DNA from: Podarcis erhardii
Taxonomy: Eukaryota
Assembly (NCBI GenBank): GCA_964252035.1
Contig: OZ176201.1
Reading direction: 5' to 3' (one strand)
DNA length: 64,000 bases
Within the stretch, counting starts at the first letter, position 1; each line of letters begins with the position of its first letter. The position numbers and the translations under genes were made by a program. Below, piece after piece: positions 2,502 through 61,924 of this stretch. Below the pieces are notes generated by a model, which searched no databases, had not been told where the DNA came from, and worked only from the letters and a program-made list of their open reading frames with translations.

Positions 2502-3834
2502 TTTGTAAAGCTGCTAATTAGTGAAACAGAAACTTCAGGAGCACCTAATTGTGAGTCTCCTCCATCTTGACTGGTTAGGTGGCTCTCCGTATGAGGCAGA
2601 TATTCCCATATGCTCCATGAGGGGAATGGAAACCAGGTGTAAAGATCTGGAAAGGGGCTGGTTCAGAACTAGAATGAGAAAGATAGAGCAGGGAGGGGAG
2701 AGACATGACACAGATAGCCAATAGCGCAAGTAGCTGTTTTAATTTCCAGTCAGTGTGTTATGCACATGCTGTGTAACTCCAGCTTACAAAATGAGAATGC
2801 TCATCTGTAATATCCCCCCCCCCATTTCCCCCTTTTCCAATACGATTTTCTTTTCTTTTTATATCTTGCGTGCGTCGTCGTTAGCGCTGCCTTTGTAGTG
2901 GTACGGGCTCGTCTTTCCTACAGGCGCGACGTTGCCAGGGAGAGGCACCCGGCACTGCGTGGTAATTAAAGCCTTTGTAGATCATGCATATTTTAATTAT
3001 GACTTGTTTTAATGTTGAAAGTATTGACTCAAGCTGCCCACATGAGACACAGCCACACATTCCATGAGGGCCGGCAGTGACGGCCAACACATTCCTCAAG
3101 ATCCCCAAATATTAAACAGACATTCACTCGTTTTTGAGCCTTGTCTGTTTCTAAGCATCTATAAATCAAGCTGTGTAATGGGTGTGCGGAGAGAATAGCC
3201 TCCCAGATGTTGGAAAGTTGAACCAAAGCACTAAGAGTGGCAAAAAGCGGTGGCGACACTAGAAGAGGGGGAGAAAACCCACAGGCTGTTTTGTTCAGAA
3301 TATGAGCGCACCTTGTCTTTATTAAGGGACAAGCAGAGGCTGGCTTTCCACTAACATAGCCTCCAACTTCCAGCCCGATTCCCCACAGGGATCCAAAAAG
3401 TTCTCGAGTTTCGACCTGCACAATGGCAGTGTTCTAAGCTCTGTTGAGGTTGGGGAAGGTTTGGTGTTTTTTTGGTCAGTGAAAGGGGTGTCAAATAACA
3501 CAGAAGTGCCCTAGACAAAACAAGATGTGTAGACAGGATGGAAACATCTCAAACTGACAATTACCTGATAGAGAAGGAATATGTGTCTACATAATAATAA
3601 TAATAATAATACAAAAGTTCCAGGAATGGAAAAATCCCTGCCTATGCTTCCTGCTCTTTTTTTGTTATGCTGACCAAGGTAGGAAGGATTAGATTTCAGC
3701 TGCCAAAAGAAATATCGTCTGTATGCTTCTCATTCTCGAGAAGGAGAATGCAGACACACAGACCTTTTCCAGTTCCCGTCTTTTGTATTTTTCTCTCACG
3801 TAATGCCAGTCAGCCAACGGTGGGCACCACAAAC

Positions 3835-3957
3835 CGGGGCTGCCAACTGAATGAAATATTGCGGGGGCCCAGGTAATTATTTGCATGACACAGTGCATCC
3901 ACAACATTTGAGTGGCATCAACTTTGAGAGGTCCTGGCCCCCTCAAATATTTTATCA
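3835..3957. mobile_element. Truncated hAT-like MITE fragment
   Basis: ggggctgccaact..aaatattgcgggggccc..ccccctcaaatatttt, resembling the 9742-10088 element; no second TIR seen. Confidence 0.4.
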
Positions 3958-3960
3958 TAC

Positions 3961-4294
3961 ATCATTAATCAACAGAAAGTGAAAGCAAATAAGGTGCCTT
4001 GCATAATGGCTTTGGCAAAGCCAGCTACTTTTTTAAAACTCTGAGTAAGACTTATTCTTTACATATTTTAGGGAGAATTCAAAATATTTTATTAGAAATT
4101 GCAAAAGAAAATTCTGAGAAAGCCTAAATCCCCCATAGAAAAATCTAGCTTTTTAAAAGAAATAAACTAAAATGTGAAGTAGTTTTACTAACTTCTCTTT
4201 GTACAACCAGAAGAGATATGGGCTTAGGGTACACTTGGCAAATAGACTACCAAGCTATGCTGCAGCACACAAATCAATTATTTTGCAATTCTTT
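3961..4294 (-). repeat. Inverted copy of KCNJ16 3' UTR segment 53743-54102
   Basis: Manual alignment of the reverse complement: about 17 substitutions in ~310 aligned nt plus two indel regions. Confidence 0.95.
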
Positions 4295-4295
4295 C

Positions 4296-4861
4296 TTAAA
4301 AAAAATATTTAATCGTTTTTTCGATACAAACTACAACCGCAAAAGACACTACAACAAAAACCATAATACAATGGTACCTCGGGTAACATACACTTCATGT
4401 TACTTACGCTTCAGGTTACAGATTCCACTAACCCAGAAATATTACCTCGGGTTAAGAGCTTTGCTTCAGGATGAGAACAGAAATTGTGCTCCAGCAGCGC
4501 GGCAGCAGCAGGAGGCCCCATTAGCTAAAGTGGTGCTTCAGGTTAAGAACAGTTTCAGGTTAAGAACAGACCTCCAGAACGAATTAAGTTCTTAACCCGG
4601 GGTACCACTGTAACAATAACACCATTTGACAATTCAGATTTAAATAAACTGATATACCTATGACTGCACCCTTTTAACAATATTTCCCCACCTCTCTCTC
4701 CTCCCCCCAATATTTCTGTAGATAGTCTTTAAATTTCTTCCAATCTTCTTCTACCGACTCTTCTCCCAGGTCTCGGATTCTTCCAGTCATTTCCGCCAGT
4801 TCCATGTACTCCGTCACCTTCATCTGCCATTCTTCCCGGGTGGGTAGATCTTGTGTCTTCT
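4296..4861 (-). mobile_element. L1 3' fragment (ORF2 C-terminus plus 3' UTR) with nested MITE
   Basis: Reverse strand reads KTQDLPTREEWQMKVTEYMELAEMTGRIRDLGEESVEEDWKKFKDYLQKY, typical of reptile L1 ORF2 ends, followed by an A/T-rich tail. Confidence 0.75.
4369..4610. mobile_element. Tigger/pogo-type MITE family A
   Basis: TA-flanked, TIR ca(a)tggtacctcggg / cccggggtaccactg. Confidence 0.9.
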
Positions 4862-16784: not shown

Positions 16785-17500
16785 TCTTTCAAGGTTCGAT
16801 CATTTTTGTCCCAAGTAAGGACACTGTCCATATTTCTTCTTTCGGGTAGCAGGTGAAAACATTTTAATTTGCTCGGGGTTTCTTGAGTTTTTTTCCTTTT
16901 TGTCTTTTAGCTATTTAGGCTAAAAGGATTGCTGAGGATGAAACAATGTTTTTAGATTCACTGTTGCTCATCAGCTTCTCAGCATGTGATAAGCTTTCAT
17001 TCTCCAACTGTGAAGGCCTCTCTTTTCCAGGCTCTAAAGAGATCTGCACATAATAATGTATGTATTGATGTTGTGTTTATCGTGGCTTGCTTGCTATTAT
17101 GGTGCTGAAAGGATAGCGCCTACTCCTAAAATCTGTCAGGGTATAGATCGGGAGTAGCTAAACATCCTGCTTATTTGTTGATAGAACTAAATGAAGCCTG
17201 TGTTATAGCTCCAGAGGAGTGAATGTTACTTTATACATTCTTATGCCAATGTGTTTTTTTGGGGGGGCATCTGAGGACATAGCCTTGCCTAATATGTTGC
17301 AATATTTGGTTAGAGAATGCTGCTTCACCTATATGAGAGCAAAAGTTCCCAGAAGTTTCTTGGTAAAGCATGTATGCATTATTTAAAATTCAATGAAACA
17401 AAGGTGCAGTTGTTTCAGAAACAAAATCTGCTATGATCTTTCCCTGTCGTGGGCTTTCATTCGAAAGGCCAATGTATTTGTTAAGAAAAATAATAATGTA

Positions 17501-17723
17501 CAGTGGTACCTCTGGTTAAGAACTTAATTCGTTCTGGAGGTCGATTCTTAACCTGAAACTCTTCTTAACCTGAGGTACCACTTTAGCTAATGGGGCATCC
17601 TGCTGCTGCCACGCCGCCGTACGATTTCTGTTCTCATCCTGAAGCAAAGTTCTTAACCCGAGGTACTATTTCTGGGTTAGCGGAGTCTGTAACCTGAAGC
17701 ATCTGTAACCTGAGGTACCACTG
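17501..17723. mobile_element. Tigger/pogo-type MITE family A
   Basis: cagtggtacctctgg / gaggtaccactg. Confidence 0.9.
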
Positions 17724-40451: not shown

Positions 40452-42241
40452 CATATATCTTTTATGTAAAATAACTTACTTCCATACTAATGTAATGGGA
40501 ATGTTGACATTTCCAAAACACCACCATTGATTTTATATTTTATATGGCTCTGTTCACCAGCAAAGAACTTTCCTTTTGTACTAGCAATTATGAAGCTTTG
40601 TTTTGCCTTCTCCTGCAGCCTCCTTATTTGCTCTGAGTTGTTCTATTAAACGATAACTTTCCAGCAGCTCCTATATGGTACCTTCCTTGCTTCTACTCAT
40701 GCCTATGAAACACACTTTCACTGGGATAATAGGAGTTCATCTGTAGGAGAGGGGTCATTTTGCATGGCCACTATGACAATGCTGGCTCATTAAGATCCCA
40801 CTTTGGGGTAAAGGTTATCTTAGATTATCTACGGGCTTCTACTCCATTGTTCTGTGATGATTCTCAGTTTGGCAGATGTTTCATACTTTATAGAATGCAT
40901 CTCATTGTTTTTAATGCGAGCGGTCTTGGGAACATATATATCCAGAAAAGCCGTATACAGTTTCTGAAATTAATAAAGATGCCAGAATGAATCATTTCTA
41001 CAGAACAAACAATTCATCTGCTTGGTGCTTTGTGAAAGAACTGCCCCACCTGATTGGGGCTGCCAGTTTTAACATCACTTGCTTGTGGGTTGATGGACAG
41101 TATGACCTCTCAAGTTGCATTGTCAGTACAGAGAGTGGCAATTGCTTGTTCAGTGACAGTGTGTGTGTGGTCTTGATTCAGCAGGCAACCCCACAAATTG
41201 GATATGAAGGTTTGTTGGGTTTTATATTTAAAAAGTTAACAACAAGAAGACAAAAGTCAGATGTCCATTAGACACATCCCTGTTGGTCTCATTCCATTAT
41301 CTCATGAATCTTTCATTACATAATGGAAATTATAGGCTCCTCTAAGTTATATTTCTTTCCAAAAATCACATCCGGAAATCACATCCATGCCTCTGCTAGC
41401 GCTGGAAGTAAATGTTTCACAAAATGGGCAGAATTTTTAAAACTGAATGAAATTTTAAACAATTTAGAATATGTTCTAAAAAAATCTTACATATTGTATT
41501 AGTTTTTTTTCAACAAAAGCCTAAATCTTGTTTTTGTTGCTGTTGTGATGATAATGATGATGGAATAGGATGTCCCTATTTTCATCGGAGAAATGTTGGA
41601 GAGTATGCTGTTCAAGATTGGCCAGGACCCTGAAAAGGAGCAATCCTCTTAGAAGTCATTTTCCTGCAGCAGGAAATACCCTCTGTCCCAAACAATGGTG
41701 TGCCTATTATATACATGTTCTGAATAGCTAATACCCAATGTATGCATTTTCTAACGTATAGAAATGCAAGTCTTGAAATGACCAATTAGCAGTTTCGGTT
41801 ATACAAACACACTACGAGACAAATGCCTTTCAGCTGCTATGACCATTCACTGTTGAATCAGCTAAGCACTGCTGGTTGAAATGTCAACGAAACAGCCTAT
41901 TAATTATAATTTTTAAAACTACTTGAGAGTTCAGGCCACATTAACAGAAAACGGGCTACATTAACAGAAAGCAGTCAAACCTGATCCTCTGATTGTTGGT
42001 GAGATGCCTTTTACCTGTTATTCAATGTGCTGTTATATTACATCATGTCTTGCTTAGAACCACAAGAAACCCATTTACTCTTCTCTGCCAGCAAGAGCTG
42101 GAAGTGAGGATTGGTGTTTTCTGTGTTCCAAAAGCTGCATGTAACCCATGAGGTTCCTTGGGAAAAGAAATCAGGAGAGAAACAGTCAAGTTCTCTACTT
42201 CTGGCAAAGGGGCGAAAATGTACATATATTGATTAGACATA

Positions 42242-42480
42242 CAGTAGTACCTCGGGTTACATACGCTTCAGGTTACATACGCTTCAGGTTACAGACTCCG
42301 CTAACCCAGAAATAGTACCTCGGGTTAAGAACTTTGCTTCAGGATGAGAACAGAAATTGTGCTCCGGTGGTGCTGCAGCAGGAGGCCCCATTAGCTAATG
42401 TGGTGCTTCAGGTTAAGAACAGTTTCAGGTTAAGAACGGACCTCCGAAACGAATTAAGTACTTAACCCGAGGTACCACTG
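42242..42480. mobile_element. Tigger/pogo-type MITE family A
   Basis: TA-flanked TIRs. Confidence 0.92.
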
Positions 42481-43936
42481 TATAGTATTTGGTTGTATGA
42501 ACTCATGATTTGGTTAAGGGTTGATGAGGCCTACAGTTGGTGTGGCATAAGAGCCACTCACACAGATATGGCAGGACAAATTTTTAGGAAACAGTGTTTC
42601 CAACTCTTGGTATTGACAAAATCCTGAAAATATAATGATGATCAGAATATCTACCTAATAGATACAGTATCTAGATGTGGTGGAGAGGAACTTTAGCCAT
42701 GAAGCTCCTTAGGGGATCATGGGCCAATCACTTCCTCTCAAGGTAGCTTACCTCACAAGGTGATTTATACCCTGCTCTGTTGTTTTGCTCCAGGGGATTA
42801 GCCCCATGTCCCTTAAAAGGTTTTAAAAGTAGACCACATAACGGCTCCAGGAATAAATAATAGAGTGCTGAAAACAACATTAAAATACTGAGTTTAGCAT
42901 CAACAATAAAATATATTGAACTCCTTAGAGAATGGTAGACACAAATAATGCTGATCTCTTTTTTTAACAAATGCACACATAAACACACATTTCTGGATTT
43001 AGTGGAACTTTTAATACTGGGAGACATCATAAACTTTTTTATGGGTGCAGATCTGAGCAAGTGATCTTAATCAAATCAAATTTGGGCTGGAATCCTAAAC
43101 CTATCTACAAGGGAGCAAGCACCCTTTAATTCAGTAGGATTTTGTAAGTAAAGATGCTTAGGATCATATGCTGTCAGTCTCCACTTCTGACCTTAGTGCA
43201 GAAATTGGTAGCTACATCTTCATGTCCCATCTAATTTAGGAGGTCAAATCAGTTGAGAGCAATGGTCCCTTCTGCCTTTGGAGGCCATGGATCTGACTGC
43301 CAAAGGAACCAGCTGCAGTCAACTTCTGTGCACTCCCCCATCCTTCTGTCAATCATCATTGGCCAAGTACCACCTCCTCCTTTTTTTTAAAACAGGATCT
43401 GGTTTCAGTTAGATGAATTAAATGGTACTGTAGGCTGTTCTAGTGTGGATGACAGCACCGTTGCATGACATTCAAGTCTGCATAACAGCCTCCTGCTCTG
43501 TGCTATTTATGTCTTTCTTTCAAATGTTTAATAAACACTTTTATATTGACATATTAAGGCGTCTCTATTGAGACCAATCCAAGTAGTATTTTGCTCCTAC
43601 TAAACATAGATTCCAGCTCATTTCAAGCATATTTATATTCCCATGTTCAAACTATTGTACTTTACTTTGATCTATTTTTAAAGCACAGAAGAATAAGGCA
43701 AATTTCAAAATAAAGGGGCAACTGAGTTCTCTGTTTCCTTTTCCCAAATCTCCCCACTGGTTCTTGAAGTTGTTGCCACCCTTTATACATGCAATATAAG
43801 GACCTCCTTAAATGGAAGGAATTACACAACTGGTCCATACATGTATGGAGAAGAGAGCAACAAAAACTCACTATAGAAGGATATAGGGTGCAAACCATTT
43901 TTACATTCCACTAACTTTCAAGTATTTTATTGTCTA

Positions 43937-47046: not shown

Positions 47047-47600
47047 CAGTGCCGGATTTACGTGTAAGCTAAACAAGCTATAGCTTAGGGCCCTACTCTC
47101 TTGGGGGCCCCCCAAAAAATTAAAGGGAAAAAAACCCTTTACATTTCCAAAATACAGTGGTACCTCGGGTTAAGTACTTAATTCGTTCCGGAGATCCGTT
47201 CTTAACCTGAAACTGTTCTTAACCTGAAGCACCACTTTAGCTAATGGGGCCTCCTGCTTGTGCTGCGCCGCCAGAGCACAATTTCTGTTCTCATCCTGAA
47301 GCAAAGTTCTTAACCGGAAGCACTATTTCTGGGTTAGTGGCGTCTGTAACCTGAAGCGTCTGTAACCTGAGGTACCACTGTATTAGATAATAAACAAATA
47401 AAATGAAACCTACATACAGCAACAGTGGCAAATGGCTTTAGATACCTATTAGGTCCATAAATTACCATATAGCATCTATTCAACACAAAAAACAGTGACA
47501 ATTTTTTTTTTTTTTTTTGTAGACAAAGGACAGCTGGACATATAAAGGGCCCCATTACCTTAAGTAGTTTAGGGCCTCATCAAACCTAAATCTGGCCCTG
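47047..47600. mobile_element. hAT MITE containing a nested MITE A
   Basis: TIR cagtgccggattta / taaatctggccctg; perfect TSD atctatac. Confidence 0.9.
47155..47380. mobile_element. Tigger/pogo-type MITE family A (nested)
   Basis: TA-flanked TIRs inside the hAT MITE. Confidence 0.92.
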
Positions 47601-51880: not shown

Positions 51881-51905
51881 CTTTTCTCTTTGGTTTCATC
51901 TGCAG
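51881..51905 (+). promoter_or_regulatory. KCNJ16: 3' splice acceptor of the KCNJ16 coding exon
   Basis: cttttctctttggtttcatctgcag|GTT polypyrimidine tract plus CAG, 94 nt upstream of the ATG. KCNJ16 normally has non-coding 5' exons spliced to one coding exon. Confidence 0.85.
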
Positions 51906-51999: not shown

Positions 52000-53304
52000 A
52001 TGGCTGAGCCTGGCGAGAAGCTTTTAAGTGTGGAAACGAATAAACTCAGACATGCACACAGCTACCAAGACACAACTTCGATTGGGATTAAAAGAATGCA
52101 AAAGCGATTTCTCCAGAAAGATGGAAGCTGCAATGTGTACTTCAAGCACATCTTTGGGGAGTGGGAGAGCTATGTGACCGACATTTTCACCACATTAGTG
52201 GACATTCAATGGCGCCATATGTTTGTGATCTTCTCATTGTCCTACATCCTTTCCTGGTTGTTCTTTGGCTTGGTCTTTTGGTTGATTGCACTCCATCACG
52301 GTGATTTATCACTCAATGAAGGAACAACCCCTTGTGTTGTCAGTGTCCATAGTTTCACGGGGGCATTCTTATTCTCTCTTGAAACCCAAACAACCATAGG
52401 CTATGGATCCCGTTGTGTCACTGAAGAGTGCTCTGTCGCAATCCTGATAGTTATCATACAGTCAGTGTTAGGCTGCATCATTGACACATTCATCATCGGT
52501 GCTGCCTTGGCCAAAATGGCCACTGCCCGGAAGCGAGCTCAGACCATCCGCTTTAGCTATCATGCCACAGTAGGCTTAAGAGATGGCAAACTCTGTTTGA
52601 TGTGGCGGATAGGTGATTTCCGCCCTAATCATATGGTAGAAGGCACAGTGAGAGCCCAGCTCTTGCGGTATGTGGAAGACAGAGTGGGAAGGATGACAAT
52701 GGAATACAAGGACTTAAAACTGTTAAACGACCAGATCATTGTTGCAACTCCAGTGACCATTATCCACGAAATTAACCAGGACAGCCCATTGTATGATATG
52801 GACAGGAAGGCTCTTGCTAAAGACAACTTTGAGATCTTGGTTACATTTGTTTACACTGGAGATTCAACGGGGACATCCCATCAGTCAAGGAGTTCATATG
52901 TGCCTCGAGAAATCCTTTGGGGGCACCGGTTCAATGACGTCCTGCAAATGAAGAAGAAGTACTACAAAGTCAACTGCCTCCAATTTGAAGAAACCACAGA
53001 GGTTTATGCTCCTTATTGTAGTGCCAAGCACCTAGACAGGAAGGAGCAAGAATACACCACCTTGGAAAAAGCAGTGGATGGAGAACCTGGAACGTCGTCA
53101 TCTTCTTCTTCCTCTTCATCAGCACCAGCACCAGCACCAAGATTAGGACTAAGAGCCCGGTCCTTTAGTGCTGAAGCATTAATCATCCACTCTGAAATTT
53201 CTGAAGAGTCAGCCAAAACTTCTAACCAAGTCAATGTTATGGAGGTGCCGTATGAGAGAGCGCTGGTGACTTTAAGTAGAATCTCAATGGAATCCCAGAT
53301 CTAA
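52000..53304 (+). CDS. KCNJ16: Inward rectifier potassium channel Kir5.1, 434 aa, single coding exon
   Basis: Motifs KDGSCNVYFKHIFGEW, TTIGYGxRCVTEECS, AKMATARKRAQTIRFS, YTGDSTGTSHQSRSSYVPREILWGHRF and C-terminal LSRISMESQI match Kir5.1 as I recall it, not Kir2/Kir4. In-frame TAA at 51991-51993 fixes the start ATG. Confidence 0.98.
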   Translation: MAEPGEKLLSVETNKLRHAHSYQDTTSIGIKRMQKRFLQKDGSCNVYFKHIFGEWESYVTDIFTTLVDIQWRHMFVIFSLSYILSWLFFGLVFWLIALHHGDLSLNEGTTPCVVSVHSFTGAFLFSLETQTTIGYGSRCVTEECSVAILIVIIQSVLGCIIDTFIIGAALAKMATARKRAQTIRFSYHATVGLRDGKLCLMWRIGDFRPNHMVEGTVRAQLLRYVEDRVGRMTMEYKDLKLLNDQIIVATPVTIIHEINQDSPLYDMDRKALAKDNFEILVTFVYTGDSTGTSHQSRSSYVPREILWGHRFNDVLQMKKKYYKVNCLQFEETTEVYAPYCSAKHLDRKEQEYTTLEKAVDGEPGTSSSSSSSSSAPAPAPRLGLRARSFSAEALIIHSEISEESAKTSNQVNVMEVPYERALVTLSRISMESQI

Positions 53305-53742
53305 CAATCTGTTGCAATGGCTGCTCTTGACTTTGCAGCAGTTTTCAAGGCGCACAAGTTGTGGACCTGGTATCCTCAAATCATAAAACGGAAGAACAGA
53401 CTCGTTGACACTTCATCGAGACTTCGGTCTAGCTGGTTTTCTTGTTTTAGTAGATAATGCTGATATTATTCATCACCTTTAAAAAAATCATTTTTTTGCA
53501 AACAATAGAATTTTGTGCCCTTGTATTTTTAAAAAAGAATGCTTAACAATATTCAGCATCAATACTGAAAATGGAGGATACCTGTTGATAAGAATTTCAA
53601 AGTTGCTTTATCACTGAAGCCATGATGTCAGATTATTTGAGTTAAAACTGCTTCAGGACCTTATAGTCCTATGGTTTAGGCGCATTAATTTTGGATTGTT
53701 CAGTGTGACTGTCTTTTGGATTAATGTACATTTCAGTAAATT

Positions 53743-54102
53743 AAAGAATTGCAAAATAATTGATTTGTGTGCTGCAGCATAGCTTGGTAGACTATTTGCC
53801 ATGTGTACCCTAGGCCCACATCTCATTCAAGTAGCTCTTTTGATTGTACAAAGAGAAGTTAATTAAACTACTTCACATTTTTGTTTATTTGTAAAAACTA
53901 TATATATATATATACTAGATTTTTATATGGGGGATTTAGGCTTTCTCCGAATTTTCTTTTGCAATTTCTAATAAAATATTTTGAATTCTCCTAAAAATAT
54001 GTAAAGAATAATTCTTACTCAGAGTTTGAAAAAAGTAGCTAGCTTTGCCAAAGCCATTATGCAAGGCACCTTATTTGCTTCCACTTTCTGTTGATCAGTG
54101 AT
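53743..54102 (+). repeat. 3' UTR segment duplicated in inverted orientation at 3961-4294
   Basis: Same alignment; includes (TA)n at ~53899-53913 that is absent from the upstream copy. Confidence 0.95.
53970..53975 (+). promoter_or_regulatory. Candidate polyadenylation signal of KCNJ16
   Basis: AATAAA ~665 nt after the stop codon in an AU-rich 3' UTR; usage not demonstrable from sequence. Confidence 0.4.
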
Positions 54103-54628
54103 TTATTTGCTACTAGACATTACAAAGATGTGAGGTCTATCACACTCAATTTTATGGCTTGTTCTTATTTAGTTACTTTCATTTCTTTTCAACTACCTAA
54201 TCATTTCATGTTGAAAATATGTTTAAAAATTGTTCTGCATATCTGGAAAGAGGATTTGTAACTTAGAGATAACGATGTGATAGCTGGTGTACTTTTTTTT
54301 TTTAAAAAAGAAAATAATATATAAATATATTTCATCCAACTATTTTGGATCCTCTCTCACTTTGTTCTTCATTCCTAAGCACACAGATAGATCAGACCAA
54401 TTTTCTTTTCTTTTTGTCTGAAAATTGCATCATTGAACTTTTAAGTTGATGGATCTCAGTTTTCCCTCAGTGCATCCTCATCCTAGGTTCAGATAACCCC
54501 TGTTGTCATAATTGGACCTTGCTGCCTAAACAGATTTCCTAGTCTCCCTTGGTTCCATGGTCTGTTGTATTCTTCCTTAGGTTGTAGCCTTCCGTTCTGC
54601 AACTGGCAGCCCATAGACCATGTCATAC

Positions 54629-55258
54629 TGTCAGGGACTGGACTGAGGAGGAAATGTGGGGGCCGCCCCTCTTCTCCTGAACCTCCCTGAGAACAAGAGG
54701 ACAGTATCAATATGGAACAGTGGTTTGCAGAAGGACATGGTTCAGAGACTGCAGAGGGGAAAAGCTGGGAGAAGAAGAGGAGGAAGAAGAAACACCGGGG
54801 GAGGGACACCTGACAGACTCGGGGTTTTTTTGAGAGTATTCTGAGCCCCCCTCTCCCAGGTCTGGGCATACATTGAGAGTAGTAGAACAGAAAGCTCAGA
54901 GGCAGAAAGCCCAGATCAGCTGGCACAGGGATGATGTAGGATAAGAGAGGCAGAGGGGGTGGCACGCCCAGGGGCAGGCCGAACCACCTATAGGGGTGGG
55001 ACACACTGCATGGCCTCTGCAGTCTGCCTGCCTCCTCCCACTCAGCCACCCTACAGCTGGGGGGGGGCAGTGGGTGGACCATTTGGACAGTGCGGAGCCT
55101 GTGTGTGCCCAAGCCACCACGTCTCTCCCAGGAAAGATGTGTGGCTTGGGCGCGCTGCAGGCCCGGTGGTGAGTGCCGCCCGGCATTTTGTCAGCTCCCT
55201 CAGTGGTGACACCTGGGGTGGCCTTCATCAACCGCACCCCCTTCCTCCGCCCCTGAGA
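54629..55258. mobile_element. GC-rich LTR-like element
   Basis: Begins tgtcaggg, ends ccctgaga (near-inverted); no TSD; boundaries tentative. Confidence 0.4.
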
Positions 55259-55291
55259 GGGTGTTGTGCTTTACTCAGAGCAACACCATTA

Positions 55292-55517
55292 CAGTGATAC
55301 CTCGGGTTACATATGCTTCAGGTTACAGTCTCCGCTAACCCAGAAATATTACCTCAGGTTAAGAACTTTGCTTCAGGATGAGAACAGAAATTGTGCTCTG
55401 GCGGCCCGGTGGCAGTGGGAGGCCCCATTAGCTAAAGTGGTGCTTCAGGTTAAGAACAGTTTCAGGTTAAGAACGGACCTCCGGAACGAATTAAGTACTT
55501 AACCCAAGGTACCACTG
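55292..55517. mobile_element. Tigger/pogo-type MITE family A
   Basis: TA-flanked TIRs. Confidence 0.92.
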
Positions 55518-55567
55518 TATTGAATAGGGACAACATTCCTCTCTCTCTGTGAATACTGAATAAATTA

Positions 55568-55766
55568 CAGTGGATGCTCGGGTTGCGAACGTGATCCATG
55601 CAACCCGGAGCATTCACAACCTGCATCTGCACACACATGGGTTGTGATTCAGCGCTTCTGTGCATGCGTGACCACTGAAACCCGGAAATAACCCGTTCCG
55701 GTACTTCCGGCGGTCTGTAACCCGAAAGAACGCAACCTGAAGTGGCTGTAACCTGAGGTATGATTG
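55568..55766. mobile_element. Tigger/pogo-type MITE family B-related
   Basis: cagtggatgctcgggttgcgaac / gaggtatgattg. Confidence 0.8.
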
Positions 55767-60840: not shown

Positions 60841-61504
60841 AAACAGAGCTATAAAAGTACCTTAATATACAGGTTAAGACAATAAAATTTATAGGGACCT
60901 CTGAGTCTCGCTGTGAGAAGAGAAGATAAGTCGCAAAGTTTGACTATTGTGGTGGTCCACTTCTTTCCCTTCCTCTCTCCCCTTCATGGAGGATCCTTTG
61001 GGAGGGGGACAATGGGGGGGGATGACTTTTTGATTTTTTTGAGCCATGGAAAAAAAGAACCTAGCACGACAGCCTCTGGACCTATTTGTTTGCACTCCGG
61101 CAGGTTTCTTAAGTAGGGACACGTCCGTCATGCCCCCAGTTTTGAAATTGACCTCTGTGGGTGGGGAAACTGGGGGAAGAAAATGTGGTTTCCATCCCCC
61201 CCCCCCAGTGTGAAATCTGCCCTTGCAATAGAACTGCTGCACTTTTCTTTCTGGAATTTGCCAGGCTTCATCCCCTTGGAAGGAGATGGATTTTCCAGTG
61301 GATAAAACAGACAATGCTGTTGAGGCCCTCGTTTCACTATGGAATGGCAAGACTCATCGGACCATTGACACCATCGCTGTCTCAAGCACATTGGAGCCCA
61401 TTTGGTTCCTTGGTATATGAGGAGCTGCAGTCAAGGAAATGGACTAGGAGATAATTTTGGCATCTGATCTATACAAACCCACTGATTCCCACAGTAGTTT
61501 AATA

Positions 61505-61763
61505 CAGTGGTACCTTGGGTTTCATACGCTTCAGGTTACATACACTTCAGGTTACAGACTCCGCTAACCCAGAAATATTACTTCGGGTTAAGAACTTTGC
61601 TTCAGGATGAGAACAGAAATTGTGCTCCGGTGGCGAGGCGGCAGCAGGAGGCCCCATTAGCTAAAGTGGTGCTTCAGGTTAAGAACAGTTTCAGGTTAAG
61701 AACAGTTTCAGGTTAAGAACAGACCTCCAGAATGAATTAAGTACTTAACCTGAGATACCACTG
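61505..61763. mobile_element. Tigger/pogo-type MITE family A with internal 17-bp duplication
   Basis: TA-flanked TIRs; aagaacagtttcaggtt repeated. Confidence 0.92.
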
Positions 61764-61924
61764 TATACTCCCTGTAGCCGGGGCGTAGAGCCTGTGGCAC
61801 TCCACATGTTATTAGACTACAACTCCCATGATCCATGGCAATTAGCCCTGAAGACTGATGGGAACTGGGGTCAAACAATATCCAGAGGACTGTGGGTTCA
61901 CTATTGCTGCTATATATCAAACTA

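What the first reader, a model, noticed from the sequence alone, without database searches (positions are those of the whole stretch)
3961..4294. Inverted ~340-bp copy of the KCNJ16 3' UTR 50 kb upstream, bracketing the locus
Seen: the reverse complement of 3961-4294 aligns to 53743-54102 at about 95% (manual count, ~17 substitutions) plus a ~15-nt indel and a (TA)n expansion in the downstream copy. The segment has no TIRs, no poly(A) tail and no resemblance to the other repeats here; it is bounded by a truncated hAT fragment on the left and an L1 tail on the right. Established: inversions made by staggered breaks leave inverted duplications at both breakpoints. Inference: either a ~50-kb inversion carrying KCNJ16 occurred in this lineage, or 3' UTR DNA was captured by templated insertion. 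The moderately diverged copies indicate an old event.
Basis: partly seen in the sequence, partly recalled or inferred. Interest (0 to 1): 0.75.

Follow-up and report, generated by a model that had tools for sequence, protein, structure and literature searches.

The report
Inverted KCNJ16 3'UTR fragment inserted upstream
In a wall-lizard-type genome, about 340 bases from inside the tail (3'UTR) of the potassium-channel gene KCNJ16 were copied backwards into a site 50 kb upstream, leaving a 12-base duplication of the target; this looks like a small one-off insertion, not a jumping-gene family and probably not the scar of a 50-kb inversion.

Summary
Window 3957-4294 (+) is the reverse complement of 53743-54106: 314 of 335 aligned bases match (93.7%, 21 substitutions). 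The downstream copy has three extra stretches, a (TA)8, 13 nt and 3 nt.

- **Gene and 3'UTR.** The ORF at 52000-53304 is KCNJ16 (99% identical to the Podarcis muralis protein). RNA-like contigs of a close relative run from the coding sequence through the whole downstream arm to about 54339 and then stop. The arm is therefore internal 3'UTR.
- **Copy number.** Summed contig depth over the arm is 1-3x the single-copy level. Repeats in the same stretch reach 10^2 to 4x10^5 times that level. There is no third copy in the window. This is not a dispersed transposable element.
The upstream copy lies between a 12-bp direct repeat matching at 11 of 12 positions (3945-3956 and 4303-4314). It ends in CTT plus an A-run. 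The downstream copy has no such repeat.

The upstream copy is therefore a derived insertion at a staggered break, a templated sequence insertion. It is probably made by a LINE endonuclease or reverse transcriptase, or by break-patch repair. Whether the template was RNA or DNA is unresolved.

The finding is ordinary and of low interest. The scan has an unchecked note of a similar gene-bracketing inverted duplication at GPR183 in this genome.

The parts
3945..3956 (+). Left copy of the target-site duplication, AAATATTTTATC. It ends exactly where homology to the 3'UTR begins.
   Evidence: sequence
3957..4294 (+). Upstream, derived copy. On the + strand it reads antisense to KCNJ16 mRNA positions 54106 down to 53743.
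4295..4302 (+). Eight bases, CTTAAAAA, between the end of homology and the right duplication copy. They are either filler or a short A-tail remnant. The A-run continues into the duplication to 4305.
4303..4314 (+). Right copy of the target-site duplication, AAATATTTAATC (11 of 12 match the left copy).
52000..53304 (+). KCNJ16 (Kir5.1) coding sequence, 434 aa, in a single exon. A probable splice acceptor lies at 51905/51906.
53305..54339 (+). KCNJ16 3'UTR (about 1035 nt) as delimited by RNA-like contigs of a close relative. AATATA and TATAAA lie at 54316-54325, before the contig end.
53743..54106 (+). Downstream, source copy. It is internal to the 3'UTR, 439-802 nt after the stop codon and 233 nt before the RNA end. 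It has no flanking duplication (best match 8 of 12).
53899..53914 (+). (TA)8 microsatellite present only in the downstream copy. Short-read contigs break here.

Best explanation
The upstream element (3957-4302) is a one-off templated insertion. A roughly 340-nt internal piece of the KCNJ16 3'UTR, or of an RNA or cDNA made from it, was copied in reverse orientation into a staggered chromosomal break 50 kb upstream on the same chromosome. Fill-in of the 12-nt stagger produced the flanking duplication. The 3'UTR copy is the source and the upstream copy is the derived one. Shown: the homology and its limits, the low copy number, the 3'UTR status of the source, and the flanking 12-bp repeat on the upstream copy only. 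Inferred: the stagger was made by a LINE (L1-type) endonuclease, and the fragment was added either by target-primed reverse transcription of an RNA antisense to the UTR or as a cDNA/DNA patch during break repair. The RNA-versus-DNA question is open because the segment has no intron and no clear poly(A) signal. No function is indicated. The copy is most likely neutral.
For: The 12-bp direct repeat abuts the homology on the left and the A-run on the right. Comparable matches occur at 57 of 63,239 positions in the window (0.09%) and at 3 of 244 AT-matched positions. The downstream copy's best match is 8 of 12, which is the null mode. The bottom-strand nick site would read ATTT/G, close to the L1 endonuclease consensus TTTT/A. 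The A-run lies next to the right duplication copy (class 1 criteria in PMC5110952). RNA-like contigs of organism G cover the coding sequence, then 53914, then 54339, with depth 0 from 54392 onward. DNA contigs of organisms A and F cross both borders of the downstream arm. Summed contig depth over the arm is 24-69 in X1 (baseline about 22) and 51-102 in X14 (baseline about 50). The repeats at 54566-55261 reach 3x10^3 to 1.3x10^5, and the MITE at 55262-55522 reaches 4-15x10^6. At five diagnostic sites (53791, 53802, 53948, 53992, 53993) the relatives' 3'UTR copy carries the upstream-copy letter. The two copies were therefore more alike in the past, as expected for a source and its copy.
Against: The near-identical 12-mer also occurs once inside the insert (4082-4093), so such AT-rich words are locally common and the duplication rests on p of about 0.01, not on an observed empty site. 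The A-run is only 5-8 nt. No poly(A) signal or common variant lies in the last 45 nt of the insert's A-tail-sense strand. The A-run sits at the end that is antisense to KCNJ16 mRNA, and the fragment does not include the mRNA 3' end, so a simple retrocopy is excluded. The upstream junctions were not checked with reads, and orthologous loci could not be fetched. Depth summed over contigs is only a rough guide to copy number.
Confidence: 0.7

Rival explanations
1. Replication-based template switching (FoSTeS/MMBIR type). A stalled 3' end switched to the opposite strand about 50 kb away, copied about 340 nt, and returned 12 nt behind its point of departure. This would give an inverted insertion with a short flanking duplication and without any endonuclease or RNA.
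For: The template is on the same chromosome and nearby, and the copy is inverted. It is an internal fragment with arbitrary ends, has 8 nt of filler at one junction, and has no poly(A) signal. The scan has unchecked notes of other local inverted duplications in this genome.
Against: No microhomology is visible at either junction between source flanks and target. The A-run next to the duplication and the T-rich nick site are unexplained coincidences under this model.
Confidence: 0.13
2. Footprint of a roughly 50-kb inversion made by staggered breaks (Ranz et al. 2007). The 340-nt segment at one breakpoint was filled in and now sits inverted at both ends of the inverted block that carries KCNJ16.
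For: The geometry fits: ancestrally unique DNA, inverted, bracketing a block. The size is close to the Drosophila median of 321 bp, and one-sided duplications are common in that data set.
Against: The upstream copy is bracketed by a 12-bp duplication of its own target, so its two flanks were once contiguous. The 3'UTR continues colinearly past the outer border (54106) for 233 nt to a plausible poly(A) site in a relative's RNA-like contigs. No AATAAA or ATTAAA lies on the minus strand in the 456 nt left of 3957, where the old distal UTR would be. No alternative junction appears among the listed joints.
Confidence: 0.08
3. Two copies of an unrecognised low-copy mobile element, for example 5'-truncated tails of a rare LINE family. 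One landed in the KCNJ16 3'UTR and the other 50 kb upstream.
For: The upstream copy has a target duplication and an A-run like a LINE tail. By construction, homology ends where the shorter copy ends.
Against: Summed contig depth over the arm stays within 1-3x single copy at 80% likeness or more in two organisms, while true repeats in the same call reach 10^2 to 10^5 times. There is no third copy in 64 kb. The downstream copy has no duplication and no A-tail. No terminal repeats were found and no Rfam family matched.
Confidence: 0.06

Closest known systems
Class 1 templated sequence insertions (LINE-1 ORF2-mediated insertion of non-LINE RNA; Onozawa and Aplan, PMC5110952)
   Same: A few hundred bases of unique, non-repeat sequence templated from elsewhere. 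It is flanked by a target duplication of more than 5 bp at a T-rich nick site and has an A-run at one end.
   Different: The A-run is only 5-8 nt and no cryptic poly(A) signal lies before it. The template strand is antisense to the only known transcript. The source lies 50 kb away on the same chromosome. The host is a lizard rather than a human.
Class 2 templated sequence insertions (cDNA or DNA patch repair of a double-strand break; PMC5110952)
   Same: An internal fragment with arbitrary ends, in either orientation, with non-templated filler at a junction and no poly(A) signal.
   Different: Class 2 events lack target duplications. Here a 12-bp duplication is present.
Inverted duplications at inversion breakpoints (staggered-break model; Ranz et al. 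2007, PMC1885836)
   Same: Inverted duplicates of about 0.3 kb of ancestrally unique sequence that bracket a chromosomal block.
   Different: One copy has its own target duplication. The other is colinear with its gene on both sides. No inversion relative to an outgroup has been shown.
L1 twin priming and 5'-inverted insertions (Ostertag and Kazazian 2001, as cited in 10.1101/2024.12.14.628481)
   Same: It would explain a cDNA segment lying antisense to the A-tail within a single target duplication.
   Different: The expected sense-oriented 3' segment (mRNA 54107-54339) is absent. Only CTT lies between the inverted segment and the A-run.

Membership tests
Class 1 templated sequence insertion (L1 ORF2-mediated) | Target-site duplication of at least 5 bp at both junctions | tested here: met
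   A 12-bp repeat matching at 11 of 12 positions, 3945-3956 and 4303-4314. Null rates are 0.09% over all positions and 1.2% among AT-matched positions.
Class 1 templated sequence insertion (L1 ORF2-mediated) | Non-templated tract of 10-40 A at the 3' end | tested here: inconclusive
   Only 5 A, or 8 counting the first three bases of the duplication, at 4298-4305. Decay after about 3% divergence per lineage is possible.
Class 1 templated sequence insertion (L1 ORF2-mediated) | Poly(A) signal 10-30 nt upstream of the A tract | tested here: not met
   None of 16 hexamer variants occurs in the last 45 nt, in either the copy or the source.
Class 1 templated sequence insertion (L1 ORF2-mediated) | Insertion at a 5'-TTTT/A-3' site | tested here: inconclusive
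   The inferred bottom-strand nick is ATTT/G (sequence). This is a partial match.
Class 2 templated sequence insertion (break patch) | No target duplication; microhomology or filler at the junctions | tested here: not met
   Filler of 8 nt is present, but so is a 12-bp duplication.
Inversion-breakpoint inverted duplication (staggered breaks) | Each duplicate keeps only one ancestral flank, and no target duplication surrounds a single copy | tested here: not met
   There is a duplication around the upstream copy. The downstream copy is colinear with the UTR on both sides in RNA-like and DNA contigs.
Inversion-breakpoint inverted duplication (staggered breaks) | The block between the copies is inverted relative to outgroups | not testable with these tools
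Dispersed transposable-element family | Many copies in the genome | tested here: not met
   Summed contig depth is 1-3x single copy over the arm, against 10^2 to 4x10^5 times over known repeats in the same stretch. There are two copies in 64 kb.
Dispersed transposable-element family | Terminal structures (TIR or LTR) and a target duplication at every copy | tested here: not met
   No terminal repeats. The downstream copy has no duplication.
Processed retrocopy of KCNJ16 mRNA | Contains the mRNA 3' end followed by poly(A), in the sense orientation | tested here: not met
   The copy ends 233 nt before the RNA end (about 54339), and the A-run is at the antisense end.
L1 twin-priming product | An inverted 5' segment joined to a sense 3' segment within one target duplication | tested here: not met
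   There is no sense segment. Only CTT lies between the inverted segment and the A-run.

The most novel reading that the evidence does not exclude
The insert was made by target-primed reverse transcription of a germline RNA antisense to the KCNJ16 3'UTR, or by an aberrant twin-primed event on KCNJ16 mRNA that lost its sense half. It re-entered the same chromosome only 50 kb away. This would be a local, inverted, LINE-driven templated insertion. Together with the unchecked GPR183 note, that would point to a recurrent lizard process that brackets genes with short inverted repeats of their own sequence.
Probability: 0.2. Interest if true: 0.45.

Novelty: new member of a known kind. Interest (0 to 1): 0.22.

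Why it matters
On its own it matters little. It is a fixed and probably neutral 346-bp insertion. Its main value is as a worked example: an inverted duplicate of unique DNA that brackets a gene need not mark an inversion, and a flanking target duplication can separate the two readings. If more such local, inverted, duplication-flanked copies of gene fragments exist in this genome, they would give a countable class of templated insertions in squamates. The class was defined and surveyed in humans. The arms share at most 48 identical bases in a row, so they are poor substrates for recombination that would flip the KCNJ16 block.

Tried and rejected
1. Orthologous loci. I tried to fetch them for P. 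muralis, Lacerta agilis and Zootoca vivipara with the look-up of encoding contigs. No empty-site or synteny test was therefore possible.
2. Earlier scan notes. A look-up by sequence was blank. KCNJ2, KCNJ16 and MAP2K6 appear in no note.
3. Rfam. There was nothing at gathering score in the whole window. Only chance-level bacterial families matched over the UTR.
4. Raw single-cell RNA reads (X23). They gave no coverage of the unique UTR, so there is no information on strand or 3' ends.
5. Sense retrocopy of KCNJ16 mRNA. Rejected: the A-run is at the wrong end and the mRNA 3' end is missing.
6. Orphan 3' transduction from a LINE downstream of the UTR. The repeats at 54566-55261 are GC-rich and not recognisably a LINE tail in the right orientation, and there is no poly(A) signal at the end of the copy.
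7. Helitron or DNA-transposon capture. Rejected: no terminal repeats, no Helitron-type ends, and a 12-bp duplication is atypical for these elements.
8. Literature. No paper links KCNJ16, lizards and inversion.
9. Presence of the upstream copy in the other species. This could not be read cleanly. In X1, a second contig at full depth covers 54090 without the 8-nt deletion, which is consistent with two loci.

Full report
**Observation.** The inverted pair is real. The repeat finder lists arms 3957-4148 and 53915-54106. MAFFT and blastn extend the pair to 3957-4294 and 53743-54106. A global alignment gives 314 matches and 21 mismatches (93.7%; Jukes-Cantor distance 0.065). The downstream copy has three extra stretches: a (TA)8 at 53899-53914, 12+1 nt at about 53825-53840, and 3 nt. 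Homology stops sharply at both ends. A blastn with word size 7 finds no further copy in the 64-kb window. Neither arm resembles the window's repeat families.

**Gene context.** The ORF at 52000-53304 (+) has the IRK and IRK_C domains. It is 99% identical to Podarcis muralis 'inward rectifier potassium channel 16'. The exact protein is not in the collection, so the window comes from another lacertid. A likely splice acceptor lies at 51905/51906. The downstream arm starts 439 nt after the stop codon.

**Is the downstream arm 3'UTR?** I used the single read-laying run on window 53000-55600 with four runs.
- Run X15 comes from organism G. The tool guesses it is RNA. It has only 72 M letters of contigs, and sister runs of the same study hold none of the gene.
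- One X15 contig of 2178 nt covers 53000-53914 and reaches about 1250 nt further left, so it spans the whole coding sequence.
- A second X15 contig covers 53914-54339. The break between the two is at the (TA)n.
- Depth is 153-261 up to 54304 and falls to 0 from 54392 onward. The DNA runs cover that later stretch at their normal level.
- AATATA and TATAAA lie at 54316-54325, just before the contig end.

The arm is therefore internal to a 3'UTR of about 1035 nt, with 233 nt of UTR after it. The raw single-cell RNA run (X23) gave no reads on the unique part and adds nothing.

**Copy number.** The tool warns that these summed contig depths are not a copy number, so I use them only for order-of-magnitude contrast.

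| Stretch | X1 (organism A) | X14 (organism F) |
|---|---|---|
| Single-copy baseline | about 22 | about 50 |
| Arm, outside the (TA)n bin | 24-69 | 51-102 |
| Repeats at 54566-55261 | 3x10^3 to 7x10^4 | 5x10^3 to 1.3x10^5 |
| Tc1/mariner-type MITE at 55262-55522 | 4-9x10^6 | 6-15x10^6 |

The arm behaves like DNA present about twice, not like a repeat family. X1 contigs break at 53772, inside the 48-nt block that is identical in both copies. That is what a two-copy sequence does in a k-mer assembly. At 54090 two full-depth X1 contigs are present, one with an 8-nt deletion and one without, which fits two loci. Contigs of organisms A, F and G cross both borders of the downstream arm, so that copy and its junctions are confirmed by independent short-read assemblies.

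**Polarity.**
- AAATATTTTATC (3945-3956) ends exactly where the homology starts.
- The homology is followed by CTT and an A-run, then by AAATATTTAATC (4303-4314).
- I scanned every position of the window with the same geometry. Only 57 of 63,239 positions (0.09%) give a match of 11 of 12 or better. Among positions with equally AT-rich flanks, 3 of 244 do, and all three belong to one locus.
- The downstream copy's best flanking match is 8 of 12, which is the null mode.
- One caution applies. Almost the same 12-mer also occurs inside the insert at 4082-4093. Such words are locally common, so I rate the duplication at p of about 0.01 rather than as proof.

Taken at face value, the two flanks of the upstream copy were once contiguous. 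The upstream copy is then an insertion and the 3'UTR copy is its source.

A second line of evidence agrees. At all five arm positions where one search lists a different letter in the relatives' 3'UTR copy (53791, 53802, 53948, 53992, 53993), that letter is the upstream-copy state. At least 5 of the 21 differences therefore arose late, in the window's own 3'UTR lineage, and the copies converge going back in time. The window differs from organism G by about 2-3% in the UTR (32 other letters in 1340 nt). The copies differ by 6.5%. On a simple clock the insertion is roughly two to three times older than that species split. Absolute dating would need a rate and the species names, which I do not have.

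**Mechanism.**
- *Sense retrocopy of KCNJ16 mRNA.* This is excluded. The fragment lacks the mRNA 3' end, and the A-run lies at the end that is antisense to the mRNA.
- *LINE endonuclease break.* A 12-bp duplication, a nick site reading ATTT/G on the bottom strand, and an A-run beside the right duplication copy are the marks used to define class 1 templated sequence insertions made by LINE-1 ORF2 (PMC5110952). Multiple L1 lineages are described in the Anolis lizard (PMC5203782).
- *Where the class 1 criteria fail.* The A-run is only 5-8 nt. None of 16 poly(A)-signal variants precedes it, in the copy or in the source.
- *Twin priming.* It would explain the orientation, but it predicts a sense 3' segment (54107-54339) that is absent.
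- *Patch repair (class 2).* It explains an internal fragment in either orientation, with filler and without a signal. It does not predict a duplication, unless the break itself was a staggered endonuclease cut.

My best reading is an insertion at a staggered, probably LINE-endonuclease-made, break. The template was KCNJ16 3'UTR sequence, and whether it was RNA or DNA is unresolved. Replicative template switching with a 12-nt back-slip is the main alternative.

**The inversion reading.** The staggered-break model is well founded. In Drosophila, 17 of 29 inversions carry such duplicates, with a median size of 321 bp, and the duplication is often one-sided (PMC1885836). The geometry here fits it. 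But the model predicts that the upstream copy keeps only its outer ancestral flank and has no duplication of its own target. It also predicts that the DNA beyond 54106 is foreign to the gene. Instead, the upstream copy has a target duplication. The UTR runs on colinearly past 54106 to a plausible poly(A) site in a relative's RNA-like contigs. No AATAAA or ATTAAA lies on the minus strand left of 3957. I put this reading at about 8%.

**Function.** Nothing suggests one. No Rfam family matches. Only one RNA-like contig covers each part of the arm in X15, so there is no sign that the upstream copy is expressed there, although contigs cannot show absence. The longest identical block between the arms is 48 nt, which is poor for recombination. 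Whether the upstream copy lies inside the KCNJ16 transcription unit is unknown. The only CpG-richer patches between the arms are at about 9.7, 38.6-39.2 and 48.0-48.4 kb.

**Verdict.** It is best read as a one-off templated insertion of 3'UTR sequence flanked by a target duplication, which makes it a new member of a known kind and of low interest. No paper in the library links KCNJ16, lizards and inversion. Earlier scan notes list a similar unchecked case at GPR183, and L1-type insertions with 13-bp duplications in this genome. I used these notes as leads only.

Noticed in passing
window 4364-4612, 55284-55521, and at least 8 more copies (e.g. 17499-17716, 42239-42482, 47153-47373, 61500-61765): A roughly 250-bp Tc1/mariner-type MITE with TA-flanked terminal inverted repeats (CAGTGGTACCTCGGGTTAAGAAC type). 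Summed contig depth reaches 4-15 million in two lacertid DNA runs, and it is abundant in RNA-like contigs too. Many joints skip exactly the element (55291 to 55540), like empty sites of other copies.
   Followed up: partly
window 54566-55261: A GC-rich mosaic of repeats just downstream of the KCNJ16 3' end, with summed depth 10^2 to 3x10^3 times single copy. It is unclassified. A 207-aa minus-strand ORF (54489-55112) was not scanned against Pfam.
   Followed up: no
window 54285-54339: The KCNJ16 RNA-like contigs end at about 54339, after a T11-A6 tract and the non-canonical signals AATATA and TATAAA. Canonical AATAAA (53970) and ATTAAA (53740, 53862) lie inside or at the edge of the arm, and RNA depth steps down from 261 to 153 there. 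Alternative polyadenylation is possible.
   Followed up: partly
window 53119 and 54090: Length variants among close relatives. Organism F has an in-frame 6-nt insertion (CAGCAC) in the C-terminal Ser-rich tract of KCNJ16. Organism A has an 8-nt deletion at the outer end of the downstream arm.
   Followed up: no
window 2868-2960: A short CpG-dense patch in otherwise CpG-poor DNA (window CpG observed/expected 0.31). It has no Rfam match and its nature is unknown.
   Followed up: no
The Rfam gathering scan of the whole window found no hammerhead family.
   Followed up: partly
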